Shown: in pieces, positions 32,798 to 39,666 of the stretch
Position numbering within the stretch: the stretch's first letter is position 1
Layout of the letters: every line of letters starts with the position of its first letter
DNA from: Oikopleura dioica
Lineage: Eukaryota; Animalia; Chordata
Assembly: GCA_907165135.1 (NCBI GenBank)
Contig: OU015569.1
Location: 11,222,001-11,286,000, forward strand
DNA: 64,000 bases
Direction: 5' to 3'
The notes under the pieces: model-generated
What the model was told of the DNA's origin: nothing
The model's database searches: none
Seen by the model: only the letters and a program-made list of their open reading frames with translations
Program-made: the position numbers and the translations under genes

Positions 32798-34975
32798 TTA
32801 TGCAAGTGGGTCTTTTGGCGCTTTCCAGAACTTTTTCTTCTCAATGACGCACATGGTAAGAAAGTCTGGGTACTCGCCGGCGGCCATGATTGCGTTGGCA
32901 GCAGTAAGGAGACACCAGTCCTGTCCGTAAGCGTCCAAGAAGTTGACCTTGTCGAGTCCAGTTAGGACGATTTGGACATCATCGGAACCCATGTTCTTGG
33001 TTGGAACACCTGAAAAATGAAGGCGAAGATATTCATTAAAAAATCACCTGATTTGAAGGTCCATGGAGTATCTTTAGTGATAACTTTGGTCAATTCGAAA
33101 GAAAAGCCTCCCATGGTGTATTTTCCGTCGTTCTTGAAGTAGGGGAAGTTCAATCGGTAAATGTTCTCAGTGTCGACAAGTGAGACTCCAACTTCGCCGG
33201 ATCGGATCTTCTTGAGGAAGTCAGCGCCGCAGACATCCTTGGTCCAGACAACGAAACCTTGGTAAAGGTCGGTTCGGGGATTGACTGGAGAGTTCTTGAC
33301 TTTGAATTTGTTGGCGAGGATGACGGAGTCTTCACCTTTGTAGATATATCGGCTTGTTTTTCGCTAAATTTGTTTTATCATTTCTTACAATAAACAGATT
33401 CAATCTTACCCTGTTCCATCTAACAGTCCAGTTTTCACACTCAGAGAGCATAGTTTCGTTTGGATCACATCGGAAGTTACCGTTGGTGTTCACGCAGATC
33501 TCGAAACTATGGCAATTGTGAGTACCAGCATCGCACTCATCGAAATCAACACACTCTCCATCGACACACGTGAATCCATCTGTGCAGGCGGGATCACAGT
33601 TACAAGTTGGAGGTTCTGTAGGTGGCTCAGTTGGCGGCTCAGTTGGTGGTTCAGTTGGCGGGTCAGTTGGGGGCTCGGTTGGCGGCTCAGTTGGATCACA
33701 AGTACCCTCAACTCGGCAGATACACTCAAAGCTCTGGAGGTCGGCGGTGTTCTGGCAATAATAATTGTCATCGCAGTTGTGATTTGCGCAAGGAGTATGA
33801 GTATGTGGCCCGTCACCAGGCTTGCAGGAGAGCTCCAAATCGTAGTCGCTCCATACGTAGCCGCCCTCGAACTCGCCGAAGTCACCGATACATGTGCTAT
33901 CGTGGTCTGGGTTTCCAGTGGAGTAGTAGGATCCACCTCCAACAGAGGATGCAAGGAACCAACCGTAGTTATTGGTCCATCGAAGTTCCCACACTCCTTC
34001 GGGACCTTCGCAAAGGTATTGATCCTTGCCATTAACGATGTCTCCGGAGGCAGTGCAGGTGGCGCTGGCAAAACCCATGCTTATTACCTTGCAGCAGCCA
34101 AGGTCAGTTCTTTCGTAATCAGCGCAAGTAGCAAGTCGACCGTCTTCGTCTTCGCCGTCCAAGCAATCCTTGAAGCCGTCACAGAGCTTGTGCTCGAAAA
34201 TAGGTCGGATGACGTCAACGTGATCGTAATGAAGGCACCTTGTTTTTGGTTCCATCGGATGAGTGTCTAGCTTAGCTTCGCAGTAGAGCACGTAGCCTTG
34301 TTCAGCATCGGTGGTGGTTAGAAGTGGGTGGGGATTATAGCTTCTGCCGTTGACGAGCGTGAACCCGCTGTACATGACGTTGGATGCTGGTTCAAAGGGA
34401 TGACCAGTGTCAATCCAGTTTGCAGGGTCGATATCTCCGACATCGCCCCCAGTGATCCAATCGGCCCAGTCGGGTCGATCCTGCTCGTGCATGTATCCAA
34501 TAGCGTGGAGAAACTCGTGGTGGATGCCACCAACAGCGATGCACCAGTTAGGAAGTCGAAGTGCTTGCCATCCATCGTGAATTCCGCTGACGCCATTGGA
34601 GCAACTATTGCAGCGACCCACGTAAGACCAGCAACCGTTTCCTTCGGATGTCTCACCGGCAATGTGAACACCGTGGGGGTAGGTGAAGTCGGGATCAAAG
34701 ACGAATCTGACACACCCCAAAGCTTTCGTGAAGTCGTCGAGCTCGTCGTGGATTTGCTGCCACTGATCTGCGGGAACAGTGTTTTGGATCGCGTATGGGA
34801 CGACGTATCTTCCAGTTGTATCCTCATCGAATTGCCAAAGTTTAGCCCAGGTCACAAGTCCTCGGCCATTAGGGGCTTTAGTTGGTGTTCCCTGGTCAAT
34901 GTTCATTTTTTCCTTATTTTGGCTCTTAACTCCCAAGAAAGTAATAATTGATACGAAATTAATAATTTTAGACAT
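32798..34975 (-). CDS. Astacin-family (M12A) secreted zinc metalloprotease with LDLa, Cys-rich, TEPP repeats, EGF/EGF-Ca and an unassigned C-terminal region
   Basis: HEFLHAIGYMHEQDRPD zinc motif, GCWSYVGR, Met-turn-like SNVMY, LDLa CDGFKDCLDGEDE, and EGF-Ca DFDECDAGTHNC. Short introns link the 3' exons to the stop at 32798. Confidence 0.88.
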
Positions 34976-35783
34976 TCAATAGCCTTCTCCTTTTCATAAC
35001 CAATTTTTTCGAACTCAGCAACCTGCCAGGTTTGAACGATCATATCACCATATTCGCCGTTATGCCAGTCTGGAAGGGTAACTGGAAATTTTGGCTCCCA
35101 TTTTCCTCTTCTAGCGGCGACCTAAAAGAACTTTTAATCTCTATCTCTCTCATTGATACTTACAGCAGCGGCCGTTGCAGCGAAAATTTTCATAATCCGA
35201 AGTTTTTCGATGCTCGATCGGTCAATGCTCTCCAAAAGTCAGATATAAATGAACCGACGCGTATCTCTGAAATCATGTTCCGCAGTTATCATGCATCGGA
35301 TCCTCAGCGGGCGGGGCTATTCGATGTTTAATTTCGATGTTCGAATTTTGGTCAGATTTGAAGTGTGATATTTTATTCATTGACTCCATAGGTACTCCTC
35401 TTTTCTTGCCTTTCTCTTTGCATCGAATTTTGCATGATTTTCATTTTTTACACTTTTGATGAACAAATACCTGCCTGAAATATTTTCTGAAATCAATTCT
35501 GTCGCAAAGTCGGCTTGTAAAATGAAAACTCCTGCAATAAAACTCAGATCATTTTCGGGGACTTTATTCGATATAATTGATCAACTTCAATTTAATAAAC
35601 ATTTTAGAGAGGCCTGCAGTTGGGACCAAGAATTGGGTATGGGCAAGCTAAGCGAGGGAAAATATACAATGGAGAGGGCAGTTAGAATTGTGAGGTAAAG
35701 AGGGTACATGGGGCAGTGTGTAGTTCGAGGTTGATATTTTATCAGTTAGTTTTTCTTGGCACGGGGGTGAGAGATGTGCAGGC

Positions 35784-38700
35784 TTAGATGAAGAAAAGCG
35801 AGTCTTGGAACACCTGCTTGACGGTAGTTCGCTTGTCGTGGGAGTCGAAGTATTGTCGGACTTTTGGGAGCTCCTTTTCGAGATTCTTGGAGCCCTTCCA
35901 GTGTACACGAGCTCGTTCAGCTACGATGGAAGCGAGTCTGACTGGGGCGCATTCCGAAGTTCTGAAATAATGTTTACTTCTTTGACTTGTTTAATCTATC
36001 TTACGCTCGGTTGGCGCGCATGGTTGCTAGAGACAGCGCGTATGTCATTTCTGACATATTTTGGAGCTCGATGTTGTTGTCGTCATGGAGGACCTGATAG
36101 AAAGTCGGATTCACTGTTCCGCAAGCCGCCTGTGACGCAAGGTGGAAGGAGTAGGTGTCTAAAGAAAGAATTGATAATAGGAAGGCGGCATGTTGACTTA
36201 CCTGGAAGGCCGTTTCCGTAGCCGGCGACGACGGTTCCAGCGGGGATGTTCTCACCCATTCCGTCCTTGTCCTCGTCATTAACGCAGAAAAATTTCTGCT
36301 TGGAGCCTCGGACGGAGCAGATGAAGGTGATGCCTGGCTGGTAAGACTCGTCGATCTCTGCGAGGGCCTTTCGGATGCCTTCCATGAGCTCGTTTTGAGA
36401 ATCGATTGGATGGCTCCCTCGCTGGCACCTCCTCGGTAGATTATGATCCGCTCTGGCTTGGCACCGTTGTTCTTTGTGATGAACTGGCCGATGAGGTGCC
36501 TGAGAGCGGCCTTGAGGGTGTCTTTGTGGATGATGCAGAGGCGGGGGTCTTGATGGTAAACAAAGTTGACAAAGCCAGTTCCACCTTGAGCCGTGGATGC
36601 AACAAAACCCACGAGAGATGGGTCAGTCGACTCTGGCTCCGCATGCGAGATGCTCATTCCCATGATCATAAGAGGAGTTGGCGAGGGTGGTAGAGGAACG
36701 TCGATTCGCCAGTTTTCGCCGCCGAGTTTGGCGTTGAGCTAAGATTGTTTTTAGATATTTTTCAATGTAAGGGATGTTACCTTGTACCAAAGATTTTTGA
36801 GCATCGCTTCCTCTGGCCGAATGACATTTTTGGATCTGACCATCTGGGTGAGGATGCCATTGTTGAGTTCGGCGATGGACTTGACCACTTCGTAGTCGGG
36901 GCCAGAGTCAGGGACGCAGACAAGCACAAATGCAAGTTTGTCTAGATATTTTCCTTCCTTAGCGTGATCCGTAATGATTCGATCGAATTCGAAGCCCGAG
37001 TCAATTTTTTCGTCTAGCATCGGCTCGGACTTGATTTCAACGCCGAGTTTTCTGCCAACATTGACAAACATTTTGCCGAAGGTATCCCAGGTCTGTCGAT
37101 CTCGAATTTGGCTGCCGATACAGATTCGTCCCCACATCGGCACCTCGGCGGCCTTGTTGAAGGCGTTGATATTCCAAGTTCCGTTTCCTTCGCCTTTTGA
37201 CTTTTCAACGTCAACTTGATGGCCCGCGTTAGCAGTGATTGCTGGCATGTCGAGGACTCGACCTTCAGCGCTCATCGCTTCTTTGTTGATTCGCATACCG
37301 AAGCCTTCAAGCATTTGATCATCGAAGAGTTCTTTCGTCTCGACGATCTCTTGAATCCTTGCCTGTCGGATCGGCGCAGCCTCTGCCGAAGCTCGGATGA
37401 GGTGGGCCTTGTCATCTGCAGAGATAACTTTTGGTCTTTGCCCCGCGAGGAGGCGGCACATGTCAGCAGGAAACATCTTATTTCCGGCGCCTCGACCACG
37501 GCCTCGTCCACCGCCACGACCACGTCCACCACCACCGGCTTTCGCAGTTGTAACGACAACTGGGAAGTTGCCATTTGGACTGTAGTCGTGGTACTCGTCT
37601 CCAAGGCGGGTTTCTCGGCAAATTGGGCCGAATTTCTCGAACTTGTAATACCTCCCGTCTTCTCCTGAAAAAGAATTTATGTATCTTTTAAAAATAAGTT
37701 TTTCCATCTTACCTCTCACCTCCATGTTGAGGTGCTTAATGCTGTCCGCGAGTTCATGGAGATTGTCCGGATCGTACGAATCCCGAAGGATGTCAGCAAT
37801 ACACTTGTGCTCCATGAACATGCCATAGGCCACTAGAGATGGTTCGATTAGGTTTTGGTACTAAAATACTCACAATCAACACTGAGGGTGACTTTCGTGC
37901 CGATGCCTTTCCAGTTGGAGATCTTGGCACTCTGGTGAATTCCGTGCCAGACTTCACGGCCGCGAGGGATGATTCGGCGATCTGCATCTTTGTTCGCAAT
38001 TGGGCAAAAAGCAGCCCGACCCTTTGAGATGGCACTGAGATAATTGTTAGTAAAGACAAAGATCTATTTTCATAGACTTACGCTGCTCGCAGAGCGGGGT
38101 TCGTTCGAAGTATGATCTCGATCGCCTGGATTACTTCGGGGGGATGTTGTCCTCCACTCTCCATGAAGTCGAAAAGGGCTTTCATCTCGACTCGGTGCCT
38201 GTTCCGTTCGAGAGTTCCTTCCGCAGTTTCCTCCTTGTGGCCAGTTGAGTAAGTGACGCGGAACTCGACATCTCGATTCTCGTAGACACTTCCATCGCGA
38301 TTCCCTAATTCCCCGAAGTTTCGAAGCTCTCGTGGAGAAATTAACATCTTGTCTCCGTCGAAAGCAAACTTGACCCCGAAAATTTGAGAGAGGACGCCGA
38401 CAATTTTCCGCTTGTTCTCTTTCTTCACGTCTGGAGCAGGCCCTTTGCTTGGGCCTTTCTTAGCGGAGGCAGCAACCTTAAAGTTACGGAGCTGTAAAAC
38501 AAAGTTGAAATAAACTCACTTTCGCTTTGAATTCGTAGATGTAGAAGACAGCGTCGTTGCTCTTGAAGTCGAGAGCGTAGTTGTTGGTCTTCATCTGGAT
38601 CACTCGTCCGCGGTTGAGCTCTCCTCTCATCTTCGCCACTGGGACATCTTGGGTCTTTCTTGCGACTTCTCTGGCTAAATTCAAAGAATAATTTTGATAG

Positions 38701-39242
38701 AAACTCTTCACTCAACCTCTATCATGTTGTTTCCGGTCCTCATCAGTTTTGGAAAACTTGGCAATATCGGCCCTCAAGTTGAGGGCGTCGAACTGTCGAG
38801 CAAGATCAGCTCTGGCACGCTCGATCTGGTCACCGCCATGGTAGGCTTCGCGCTTGATGTTCTGGAGGCGCTCTTCTCGCTCTTTAGCCTGAATTTTTGT
38901 TAATTGTCGCGCTCGAGCCCATGGGGCCATAAGGTGGTGATAAAGTCCTACCTTGTCTTGGCGCTTTCCGCGACCTGCGTTTCCGCCACGGCCACCACGT
39001 CCGCCTCGACCACCACCGCTGCGGCGGTTGTCACCATGATCTGAAAACAAAATTTGAAATCTAAGATTTGAAACCTTATTTGAAAATCAAAGATAGGAAC
39101 TCGTAAAATAACCTCGTCGATTGTAGTCGCGACTACCACCGCGATTATCACGGTCGTGGTCGTATCCACCTCGGTCCCGGTCGCGATCTCGTCGATCATA
39201 AGATCGATCTCGATCCCGGTCATCGTGTCGGTCGTATCCCAT
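35784..39242 (-). CDS. Divergent Argonaute (AGO-like), predicted non-catalytic; one apparent frameshift near 36393-36396
   Basis: DR/RGG-rich N-terminus, GRVIQMKTNNY (N domain), GREVWHGIHQS (L1), FPADMCRLLAGQR (PAZ end), MID DYEVVK..TQMV..KNLWYKLNAKLGG, PIWI YRGGASEG, YQPGITFI and GTVNPTFYQVLHDD, and C-terminus SLFFI*. Confidence 0.92.
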
Positions 39243-39666
39243 TTCTCTTCTTCTTTCTCTTTTAATTTGCAAAAAAGTGAAAAAATTGGTTCATAAAATG
39301 AATGAGGAAAATCGAGCTGGACGGCGCTTTAAATACTCCGATCCGAAAAGTCGCGATCATAAATGATAAAAGGATACACAGAACCCGGATATTGGGGCTC
39401 CGGATGGAACCTGATCGTCTTTCTCTGAGGATCGCGACTTTGGATCTGGGAAACCTTACGTTTCATGTCGTTACGTAGTCATACTCATCCTTCATTCCGA
39501 AGATGACGACAGTCCAACTCCCTCATCTTTTTTGCGCGTTTGCGTGGAATATTTGCTCTTGAATTTTCTTTGAATTCATGGCAAAGTGTGAAGTTCTTTT
39601 TAGGTCAAGTTATGAAGTAAGTTTTGGTTTTCAATGTAGAAATAAACGTTTGCCGCGAAAGACAAC

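What the first reader, a model, noticed from the sequence alone, without database searches (positions are those of the whole stretch)
35784..36990. Chordate Argonaute with the whole DEDH slicer tetrad lost but the 5'-phosphate pocket intact
Aligned by eye to human AGO2: GADVTH becomes GMSISH (D to S), RQEII becomes RLCII (E to C), YRDGVSEG becomes YRGGASEG (D to G), and YYAHLV becomes RLASIV (H to S). MID residues Y, K, Q and K (DYEVVK, TQMV, WYK) and the hydrophobic C-terminus are kept. This predicts a guide-binding, non-slicing, fast-evolving Argonaute, analogous to nematode WAGOs, and points to a lineage-specific small-RNA pathway.
Basis: partly seen in the sequence, partly recalled or inferred. 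Interest (0 to 1): 0.8.

Follow-up and report, generated by a model that had tools for sequence, protein, structure and literature searches.

The report
Slicer-dead Argonaute gene in Oikopleura
This is an intact gene of the larvacean tunicate Oikopleura dioica for an Argonaute protein that keeps its small-RNA anchoring pocket but has lost all four RNA-cutting residues. It belongs to a conserved, expressed, larvacean-only subfamily, so this relative of vertebrates probably runs a silencing pathway that does not cut its targets.

Summary
The minus strand, 39242-35784, carries an 11-exon, roughly 991-aa Argonaute gene with ten GT-AG introns of 41-72 nt. HMMER alignments to human AGO2 and PIWIL2 place S, C, G and S at the DEDH slicer positions. 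The MID 5'-phosphate pocket (Y, K, Q, K, K, R) and the hydrophobic C-terminus are intact.

The single frameshift is an assembly error. Read-derived contigs of two samples add one base to the A-run at 36393-36396, which restores the frame.

The gene is not a pseudogene. dN/dS against its paralog is 0.12-0.15. Its own branch gives 0.22, with a bootstrap range of 0.14-0.34.

It is not unique. Two paralogs in this genome and at least ten further sequences from marine data form a clade with 100/100 support. All share S / variable / G (N in one) / S, A or N at the four positions. Two related lineages are represented by full-length, spliced-leader-capped mRNAs.

Eight or nine of the genome's 12 Argonaute loci lack the tetrad, and three cellular RdRP loci are present.

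Guide binding, the small-RNA class and expression of this particular copy remain untested. Other windows of this scan flagged paralogous slicer-dead Argonautes.

The parts
35784..39242 (-). Whole coding gene, from ATG 39242-39240 to TAA 35786-35784. It has 11 exons: 39242-39113, 39040-38952, 38888-38717, 38674-38520, 38476-38082, 38034-37874, 37832-37713, 37664-36781, 36738-36202, 36158-36005 and 35961-35784. The protein is about 991 aa.
   Evidence: Model built; all ten introns are GT-AG and 41-72 nt long. Splice sites are conserved in paralog L038 and in metagenome copies L043 and L052. Every junction is reproduced in the intron-free mRNA contig L055 of a related lineage.
38952..39242 (-). 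N-terminal low-complexity region rich in Arg-Asp and Arg-Gly (RGG) repeats. It begins MGYDR and is predicted to be disordered.
   Evidence: Translation. The equivalent 130-140 residues have pLDDT under 50 in both AlphaFold models of relatives. The MGYDR start is conserved in L038, L052, L055, P0165 and P0204.
37874..38674 (-). Argonaute N domain and linker L1 (exons 4-6).
   Evidence: Pfam ArgoN E 1.9e-07, over its cut-off; ArgoL1 E 0.0076, under its cut-off.
37400..37832 (-). Shortened PAZ-like domain. It has a deletion of about 12 residues relative to canonical AGOs and an RG-repeat insert of about 20 residues (codons at 37542-37477).
   Evidence: No Pfam PAZ hit for this gene or for L055; a weak hit (4.9e-05, under the cut-off) in the basal member P0165. 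In the model of L055 the domain is folded (pLDDT 78-95), but the RG loop, residues 471-481, is under 50.
36781..37399 (-). Linker L2 and MID domain with the 5'-phosphate pocket residues Y665, K669, Q681 and K702. K706 follows in the next exon at 36729-36727.
   Evidence: Pfam ArgoL2 1.1e-05 and ArgoMid 0.0058. HMMER alignment to hAGO2/3 with E 1e-17. The pocket is invariant in all clade members.
35784..36738 (-). PIWI (RNase H-like) domain over exons 9-11. It carries S731, C770, G805 and S944 in place of D597, E637, D669 and H807. R949 (equivalent to R812) and the C-terminal LFFI are kept.
   Evidence: Pfam Piwi 3.7e-28. Alignments. Codon coordinates.
36393..36396 (-). Assembly error. The A-run reads 4 A in the assembly but 5 A in read-derived contigs. 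Correcting it gives ILK-N-ELMEG and one continuous frame.
   Evidence: read laying: 'put in behind 36392: T' in 80.4 of 80.4 depth in X1 and 9.36 of 9.36 in X2. This exon is 538 nt in L038, L043, L042 and L052 against 537 nt here. The paralog and the mRNA read ILKNEL.
35732..35744 (-). Small conserved 3'UTR hairpin, core TGATA-AAA-TATCA, about 40 nt after the stop codon.
   Evidence: The block (G)TTGATAAAATATCAAC is present at the same place in L038, L042, L043, L052 and L055, although synonymous sites are saturated between these lineages. Fold z-scores are -4.8 here and -6.0 in L055.

Best explanation
The locus is a functional gene of the larvacean Oikopleura dioica. It encodes a full-length AGO-clade Argonaute that can no longer cut RNA. 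The protein most likely still loads a 5'-phosphorylated small RNA: the MID pocket, R949 and the C-terminal carboxylate tail are intact. It would then pair with targets and silence them without slicing, by recruiting partners. Likely contact surfaces are the disordered N-terminal RD/RGG region and the RG loop inserted in the reduced PAZ domain; arginine-glycine repeats are the usual docking sites for Tudor-type partners. Shown here: gene integrity, loss of all four catalytic residues, retention of the pocket, purifying selection, membership of a larvacean-specific clade, and mature mRNAs for related lineages of that clade. Inferred: guide loading, lack of cleavage, and partner recruitment. The class of guide is open; products of the genome's three cellular RdRP genes are one candidate.
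For: Gene model with ten GT-AG introns and no stop codon. The frameshift is removed by read contigs of two samples. Pfam hits ArgoN (1.9e-07) and Piwi (3.7e-28) over their cut-offs, ArgoL1, ArgoL2 and ArgoMid under theirs. The tetrad is S/C/G/S by HMMER against solved structures and by profile alignment. The MID pocket aligns to hAGO2 and is invariant in the clade. dN/dS to paralog L038 is 0.15 overall and 0.11 in PIWI. Branch omega is 0.22 (0.14-0.34) for this copy. All exon indels against L038 are multiples of three. L038, L043 and L052 are intact ORFs of 1003-1024 aa. L055 and L046 are intron-free contigs that begin with the spliced leader, which occurs 53 times in this genome. AlphaFold models of two relatives align to human AGO2 from the N domain to the last residue, with Z 46 and about 750 aligned residues. 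The clade has 100/100 support.
Against: There is no RNA evidence for this particular copy. Two bulk RNA runs laid no read, and the tool rates that as no test. This copy evolves about four times faster at non-synonymous sites than its sister L038 (48 against 23 private substitutions), so some relaxation of constraint is possible. The PAZ domain, which normally holds the guide's 3' end, is reduced and not recognised by Pfam. No small-RNA data, partner proteins or biochemical data exist. X1 may be the sample the assembly came from, and X2 is from the same study.
Confidence: 0.8

Rival explanations
1. Recent pseudogene: the 1-nt deletion is real and the copy is decaying, while its paralog L038 carries the function.
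For: The assembly shows a frameshift. This copy has a higher branch omega than L038, 0.22 against 0.046. No read from two RNA runs was laid.
Against: Contigs of X1 (depth 80) and X2 both carry the extra base. There is no other stop or frameshift in 2.97 kb of coding sequence. All ten splice sites are intact. Omega is far below 1, with an upper bootstrap bound of 0.34. The private substitutions are mostly conservative and none touches the MID pocket.
Confidence: 0.04
2. A canonical microRNA effector that simply does not need slicing, like vertebrate AGO1/3/4. It would load miRNAs and act through a GW182-type partner rather than in a separate pathway.
For: The fold and the best sequence matches are human AGO1-4. 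The MID pocket is of the 5'-monophosphate type.
Against: The genome already has miRNA-type AGOs with much higher similarity to canonical AGOs: L033 and L034 score 959 and 1020 bits on my AGO profile, against 404 bits here. The clade sits on a stem of 1.8 changes per site. PAZ is remodelled with an RG insert. The RGG N-terminus is not a feature of vertebrate AGO1-4 (my own knowledge). No Ago_hook family match was found in the genome, but that search had no positive control.
Confidence: 0.12
3. An Argonaute-derived protein that no longer binds guides and acts as a scaffold, a decoy, or an RNA-binding protein through its RGG regions.
For: The PAZ domain is reduced and not detected by Pfam. All catalytic residues are gone. 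RGG repeats can bind RNA by themselves (my own knowledge).
Against: Six pocket residues and the C-terminal tail are invariant across clade members that are only 38-45% identical. That is hard to explain without 5'-phosphate binding. The L2-MID and PIWI domains have the lowest omega, 0.12 and 0.11.
Confidence: 0.08
4. A still-active nuclease that uses other residues for catalysis.
For: None positive. The tools return no atomic coordinates, so neighbouring acidic side chains could not be inspected.
Against: All four positions are replaced at once by residues that do not bind metal. The residue at the glutamate-finger position varies freely in the clade (C, A, N, S), as expected for an unconstrained, non-catalytic site.
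Confidence: 0.02

Closest known systems
Oikopleura dioica 'unnamed protein product' / 'Piwi domain-containing protein' (P0201, NCBI/UniRef annotation of the reference genome)
   Same: It belongs to the same clade and the same sub-branch as this gene. It is 89% identical to the mRNA L055 in MID-PIWI and has the same S/A/G/S positions, pocket and FFI end.
   Different: P0201 is a truncated 648-aa model from another O. dioica lineage. In the held database it has no name, no functional note and no mention of the lost tetrad. The copy in this window is a lineage-specific duplicate, sister to L038.
Vertebrate AGO1-4 (AGO clade; AGO1 and AGO4 do not slice)
   Same: They share the four-domain architecture, are the best structural match (Z 46 to hAGO2 over about 750 residues) and the best sequence match (E 8e-43), and have the same MID pocket residues.
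   Different: The sequences are only 24-28% identical. All four tetrad residues are lost here, whereas the vertebrate non-slicers keep most of them (my own knowledge). There is a long RD/RGG N-terminal extension, PAZ is shortened and has an RG insert, and the clade sits on a very long separate branch.
Nematode WAGO (worm-specific Argonaute) clade
   Same: Both are lineage-specific expansions of Argonautes lacking the catalytic tetrad, in a genome that also encodes cellular RdRPs. RG motifs in N-terminal disordered regions occur in some WAGOs (my own knowledge).
   Different: Common descent was not tested. No WAGO reference sequence could be obtained, and WAGOs are nematode-restricted by definition. 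5'-triphosphate 22G-type guides are unknown here.
PIWI-clade Argonautes
   Same: Both have N-terminal arginine-glycine repeats. The first half of the PIWI domain alone scores slightly better against PIWIL2 than against AGO2.
   Different: The L2-MID region matches only AGO-clade chains. The full MID-PIWI region scores 8e-43 against AGO2 and 5e-22 against Piwi. The AGO-type families ArgoN, ArgoL1 and ArgoL2 are detected. The genome's single Piwi-like locus, L036, keeps DEDH and is very distant.
Arthropod siRNA-type Argonaute-2 (centipede, beetle, tick, locust)
   Same: These are the nearest named proteins outside the clade in the all-protein search, at 27-33% identity in L2-MID. They are also fast-evolving AGO-clade members with long low-complexity N-termini.
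   Different: They keep DEDH and a recognisable PAZ domain. No sister relationship is resolved in the tree.

Membership tests
Eukaryotic Argonaute, AGO clade | N, L1, L2, MID and PIWI domains in that order | tested here: met
   Pfam ArgoN 1.9e-07 and Piwi 3.7e-28 are over their cut-offs; ArgoL1, ArgoL2 and ArgoMid are under their cut-offs but fall at the expected places. My AGO profile matches exon by exon in order. The model of a 66%-identical relative aligns to hAGO2 residues 22-859.
Eukaryotic Argonaute, AGO clade | PAZ domain that holds the guide's 3' end | tested here: inconclusive
   There is no Pfam PAZ hit here or in L055, and only a weak hit in P0165. The domain is shortened by about 12 residues and carries an RG insert of about 20 residues. 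It is nevertheless predicted folded in L055, with pLDDT 78-95 outside the loop.
Eukaryotic Argonaute, AGO clade | MID 5'-phosphate pocket (Y529, K533, Q545, K566, K570 and R812 of hAGO2) and a C-terminal tail inserted into it | tested here: met
   Y665, K669, Q681, K702, K706 and R949 are aligned by HMMER. They are invariant in 13 clade members, and the C-terminus is FFI or FFL in all.
Slicing Argonautes | DEDH catalytic tetrad in the PIWI domain | tested here: not met
   The four positions are S731, C770, G805 and S944.
Eukaryotic Argonaute, AGO clade | Branches with AGO-clade rather than PIWI-clade proteins | tested here: inconclusive
   Rooted on the genome's Piwi-like locus L036, the clade falls among AGO-clade representatives. 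PDB sequence and fold matches favour AGO over PIWI. The tree holds only one PIWI-type row and no WAGO row.
Nematode WAGO clade | Descent within the nematode-specific WAGO radiation | not tested
A larvacean-only distribution makes membership unlikely but does not test it.
Nematode WAGO clade (works-like question) | Loads RdRP-made secondary small RNAs | not testable with these tools
   Only the precondition is shown: three loci match the cellular RdRP family PF05183, with E 2e-87, 1e-57 and 2e-52.
Functional gene (versus pseudogene) | Open frame, intact splice sites, purifying selection | tested here: met
Functional gene (versus pseudogene) | Transcription of this copy | tested here: inconclusive
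   Runs X11 and X12 laid no read, which the tool rates as 'no test'. Mature mRNAs exist for related lineages of the clade: L055 at 66% identity and L046 at 38%.

The most novel reading that the evidence does not exclude
Larvaceans run a chordate counterpart of the nematode RdRP/WAGO system. Cellular RdRPs (three loci) would make secondary small RNAs, and these would be loaded into a dedicated, lineage-specific set of slicer-dead Argonautes (this clade and the other tetrad-less loci; 8-9 of 12 in the genome). They would silence targets without cutting. This could be the machinery behind the DNA-induced gene silencing (DNAi) reported in O. dioica (PMC5345011).
Probability: 0.25. Interest if true: 0.85.

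Novelty: new variant of a known kind. Interest (0 to 1): 0.62.

Why it matters
Non-slicing Argonautes are well known, so the category is not new. What is unusual is the setting. [quoted passage not shown] Here most Argonaute genes have lost the catalytic tetrad, one loss-of-tetrad clade is conserved and expressed across larvacean lineages, and cellular RdRP genes, which vertebrates lack, are present.

This gives a concrete, testable entry point to two open questions: what RdRPs do in a chordate, and how DNA-induced silencing works in Oikopleura.

In the held protein database the reference-genome member is only an 'unnamed protein product'. The one paper found that catalogues Oikopleura Argonautes (PMC4402516) says only that several belong to the Ago subfamily and one to Piwi.

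There is also a practical lesson. The frameshift is a homopolymer error of the assembly, and two in-frame introns read as open frame, so ORF-level reading of this genome misleads.

Tried and rejected
1. My first gene model was wrong in three places. It used a 28-nt intron, since replaced by a 43-nt intron ending TTTAAG. It also read two in-frame introns (63 and 48 nt) as coding. Comparison with L038 and the mRNA L055 corrected it.

2. RNA runs X11 and X12 laid no reads.

3. The word-index protein search with the 369-aa exon found only fragments because of its length window. The full-library search and a region search with L055 did better.

4. The Ago_hook (GW182) family search found nothing and had no positive control, so it was not used as evidence.

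5. A MAFFT --auto run timed out and was redone with faster settings.

6. A regular-expression check of the third catalytic residue of locus L034 found nothing.

7. No supplementary files of PMC4402516 are held, so its Argonaute list could not be compared.

8. PIWI-clade and WAGO reference sequences could not be obtained, so the clade question rests on one outgroup plus PDB scores.

9. The pseudogene reading was rejected.

Full report
**What is there**

The region lies in a compact eukaryotic genome of 64.28 Mb in 19 contigs; the window is C2:11,222,001-11,286,000. Three-frame translation of the minus strand between 39300 and 35700 gives a string of open pieces that match Argonaute domains in order. 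Pfam finds ArgoN (1.9e-07), ArgoL1 (0.0076), ArgoL2 (1.1e-05), ArgoMid (0.0058) and Piwi (3.7e-28).

After correction (see below) the gene has 11 exons from the ATG at 39242 to the TAA at 35786-35784. It has ten GT-AG introns of 41-72 nt and encodes about 991 residues.

The organism is the larvacean Oikopleura dioica or a member of its species complex. The nearest annotated protein is an 'unnamed protein product [Oikopleura dioica]'. Related transcripts begin with a leader sequence that occurs 53 times in this genome and never in the reversed control.

**The observation**

- HMMER alignment of the first PIWI exon to solved PIWIL2 and AGO2 chains places GMSISH opposite GMDVYH/GADVTH, RLCII opposite the glutamate-finger motif, and YRGGASEG opposite YRDGVSEG.
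- My profile alignment places RLASIV opposite YYAHLV.
- A complete MID-PIWI alignment of the 66%-identical relative L055 to human AGO2 (E 7.8e-43) shows all four positions in one alignment.

In my numbering the residues are S731, C770, G805 and S944; codon coordinates are.

The MID pocket is intact. Y665, K669, Q681 and K702 align to hAGO2 Y529, K533, Q545 and K566. K706 and R949 correspond to K570 and R812. These columns are at least 90% conserved over 97 Argonautes.

**The frameshift**

The frame breaks inside the run AAAA at 36396-36393. The paralog L038 reads AAG-AAC at that spot, and one more A would give ILK-N-ELMEG.

Contigs made from the reads of two runs were laid on 35700-39300. Both insert one T behind 36392, at 80.4 of 80.4 depth in X1 and 9.36 of 9.36 in X2, and X1 shows no other difference. 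X2's other differences are single-base losses inside homopolymers, with no substitutions, so they look technical.

The exon is 538 nt in four relatives and 537 nt here. The frameshift is therefore an assembly error. X1 may be the source sample and X2 belongs to the same study, so this is not fully independent evidence. The paralogs point the same way.

**Correcting the gene model**

Comparison with L038 exposed two introns that happen to be in frame and open here, of 63 nt (38951-38889) and 48 nt (37712-37665). In L038 the second is 43 nt long and must be spliced. A frame change near 38500 is solved by a 43-nt intron ending TTTAAG; its L038 counterpart is 40 nt.

All other indels between the two copies within exons are multiples of three (3, 18, 33, 36, 3, 6, 6).

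A degenerate pattern written across the spliced MID/PIWI junction found one record in the JGI collection, L055. It is 3,292 nt long. It starts with 29 nt of the spliced leader, holds one 1006-codon frame and ends in a poly-A run. It reproduces every junction of my model and has N at the frameshift codon.

**Not a pseudogene**

- dN/dS between this copy and L038 is 0.15 over the whole length. By region it is 0.17 (N-terminus), 0.18 (N-L1), 0.18 (PAZ-like), 0.12 (L2-MID) and 0.11 (PIWI).
- With L042 as a third sequence, branch values over 568 codons are 0.22 for this copy (bootstrap 0.14-0.34), 0.046 for L038 (0.024-0.080) and 0.11 for L042.
- This copy has 48 private substitutions against 23 in L038. 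They are mostly conservative and none lies in the pocket.

So it evolves faster than its sister but is clearly constrained. L038, its metagenome allele L043 and the more distant L052 are all uninterrupted frames of 1003-1024 codons with the same splice sites.

**A family, not a singleton**

A Pfam Piwi scan finds 12 Argonaute loci in the genome. At the four catalytic positions they read as follows:

| Locus | Catalytic positions |
|---|---|
| L033 | DEDH |
| L035 | DEDH |
| L036 (Piwi-like) | DEDH |
| L034 | D, E, unclear, H |
| L031 | D/N/P/Q |
| L032 | D/N/T/S |
| L040 | E/A/P/K |
| L037 | S/T/N/E |
| L041 | S/H/D/K |
| this gene | S/C/G/S |
| L038 | S/A/G/S |
| L039 | G/N/G/N |

Marine metagenome and transcript contigs add further members:

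| Sequence | Catalytic positions |
|---|---|
| L042 | S/C/G/S |
| L052, L055, P0201 | S/A/G/S |
| L054 | S/N/N/N |
| P0165 | S/N/G/S |
| P0202-P0206 | S, then N, A or S, then G, then S or A |

All of these have the pocket Y-K-Q-K-K-R and an FFI or FFL end. The first position is S (G in L039) and the third is G (N in L054). The second, the glutamate finger, drifts freely, as expected if catalysis is gone.

In maximum-likelihood trees of MID-PIWI the clade has 100/100 support on a stem of 1.8 changes per site. It arises from an unresolved base of AGO-clade representatives when rooted on L036.

Inside the clade, transcripts of other species are basal. Next come an L039/L054 branch and a branch holding (this gene, L038, L042) and (L052, L055, P0201).

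A search of 1.84 billion representative proteins with the PAZ-L2-MID exon found four relatives at E 1e-30 or better, all fragments of this clade. Scores then dropped to 1e-18 for ordinary Argonautes; the nearest named ones were arthropod Argonaute-2.

P0165 comes from a 3,655-nt contig (L046) that starts with the leader and has one 989-codon frame. Its best match in this genome is only 41-54% identical, so it is an mRNA of another larvacean.

**Structure**

Two relatives were folded, because a spliced model of this gene cannot be referenced in the tools.

- P0165: pLDDT 78.9, pTM 0.78.
- L055: pLDDT 80.0, pTM 0.79.

In both, the first 130-140 residues are disordered and the rest is confident. 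Foldseek ranks human AGO1-4 first (E about 1e-67) and PIWI-clade chains later (1e-51). VIA-align gives Z 46 to hAGO2 with about 750 aligned residues, from model residue 148 to the last residue, against Z 39-40 for PIWI proteins.

The tools return no coordinates, so I could not look for substitute acidic residues near the active site.

**The PAZ domain**

Pfam finds no PAZ domain here or in L055, and only a sub-threshold hit in P0165. In the alignment, the branch holding this gene lacks about 12 residues that canonical AGOs and P0165 have. It carries an RG repeat of about 20 residues just before the PAZ-L2 junction (codons 37542-37477). In the L055 model the domain is folded, but the RG loop has pLDDT under 50. 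How the guide's 3' end is held is therefore uncertain.

**Context**

Three loci match the cellular RdRP family, with E 2e-87, 1e-57 and 2e-52. Obbard and colleagues already reported an RdRP in 'a tunicate' (PMC2592633). Two to four loci match the Dicer dimerisation domain.

Sequence-specific knock-down by injected PCR products (DNAi) is documented in O. dioica (PMC5345011). [quoted passage not shown] I found no paper in the held library that mentions loss of the tetrad.

**Most likely mechanism**

The protein most likely loads a 5'-phosphorylated small RNA in the conserved pocket, pairs with targets and silences without cleavage. Partners would be recruited through the RD/RGG N-terminus and perhaps the RG loop.

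Gene integrity, residue states, selection, clade and family expression are shown. Loading, non-cleavage and partners are inferred. A link to RdRP products or to DNAi is a hypothesis, to which I give about one chance in four.

**Comparison and novelty**

It works like the many known non-slicing Argonautes. It meets the domain order and the pocket features that define a eukaryotic AGO-clade protein, fails the slicer feature, and is unclear for PAZ.

It is not shown to be a WAGO, and resemblance to WAGOs is functional analogy only. I file it as a new variant of a known kind: a larvacean-specific, tetrad-less, RGG-decorated AGO clade in a chordate that also keeps RdRPs.

Other windows of this scan flagged paralogous slicer-dead Argonautes and the RdRP genes.

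Noticed in passing
G000: L031 (C1:8.85M), L032 (C2:9.88M), L040 (C5:14.63M), L037 (C4:10.26M), L041 (C2:8.46M), L038 (C5:11.87M), L039 (C4:5.81M): Eight or nine of the genome's 12 Argonaute loci lack a complete DEDH tetrad. Only L033, L035 and the Piwi-like L036 keep it. L031, L032 and L040 form a second divergent clade (100/100) together with a transcript-derived protein, P0107.
   Followed up: partly
G000:C1:11201149-11202963, C2:7457815-7459549, C2:320849-322571: Three loci match the cellular RNA-dependent RNA polymerase family PF05183 (E 2e-87, 1e-57, 2e-52). Vertebrates lack this gene family.
   Followed up: partly
window 35732-35744 (minus strand), and the same place in L038, L042, L043, L052, L055: A 16-nt block, (G)TTGATAAAATATCAAC, forms a 5-7 bp hairpin with an AAA loop about 40 nt after the stop codon. 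It is conserved between lineages whose synonymous sites are saturated. Further 3'UTR blocks (AACTGCC, CCTCACAATTCT) also recur.
   Followed up: partly
window 38889-38951 and 37665-37712 (minus strand): Two introns (63 and 48 nt) are in frame and free of stop codons, so they read as coding in an ORF scan. The mRNA L055 and the paralog L038 show that they are spliced out.
   Followed up: yes
window 35756, 35862, 36794, 37005, 37601, 37911, 38138, 38311, 39271: Contigs of run X2 drop one base at each of these homopolymer runs and show no substitution. This looks like a technical homopolymer bias of that data set rather than variation.
   Followed up: partly
G000, 53 places (for example C1:7555058, C4:8484321, C5:14004228): The 21-nt 3' part of the trans-spliced leader, CCGATTTCGATTGTCTAACAG, occurs 53 times, often in close inverted or tandem pairs. 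These are presumably the spliced-leader RNA gene copies.
   Followed up: no
window 33332-34975 (minus strand): Directly downstream lies a 547-aa open frame with a metalloprotease-like HEFLHAIGYMHE motif, a run of PTEPPTEPPT repeats and cysteine-rich EGF-like modules. It looks like a secreted astacin-type protease; no family search was run on it.
   Followed up: no
L034 (G000:C5:9451783-9452955): The tandem partner of the canonical AGO L033 differs at the third catalytic position.
   Followed up: partly
G000:C2:6656899, C1:13630138, C1:8170566, C1:14447580: Two to four loci match the Dicer dimerisation domain, which suggests more than one Dicer-like gene.
   Followed up: no
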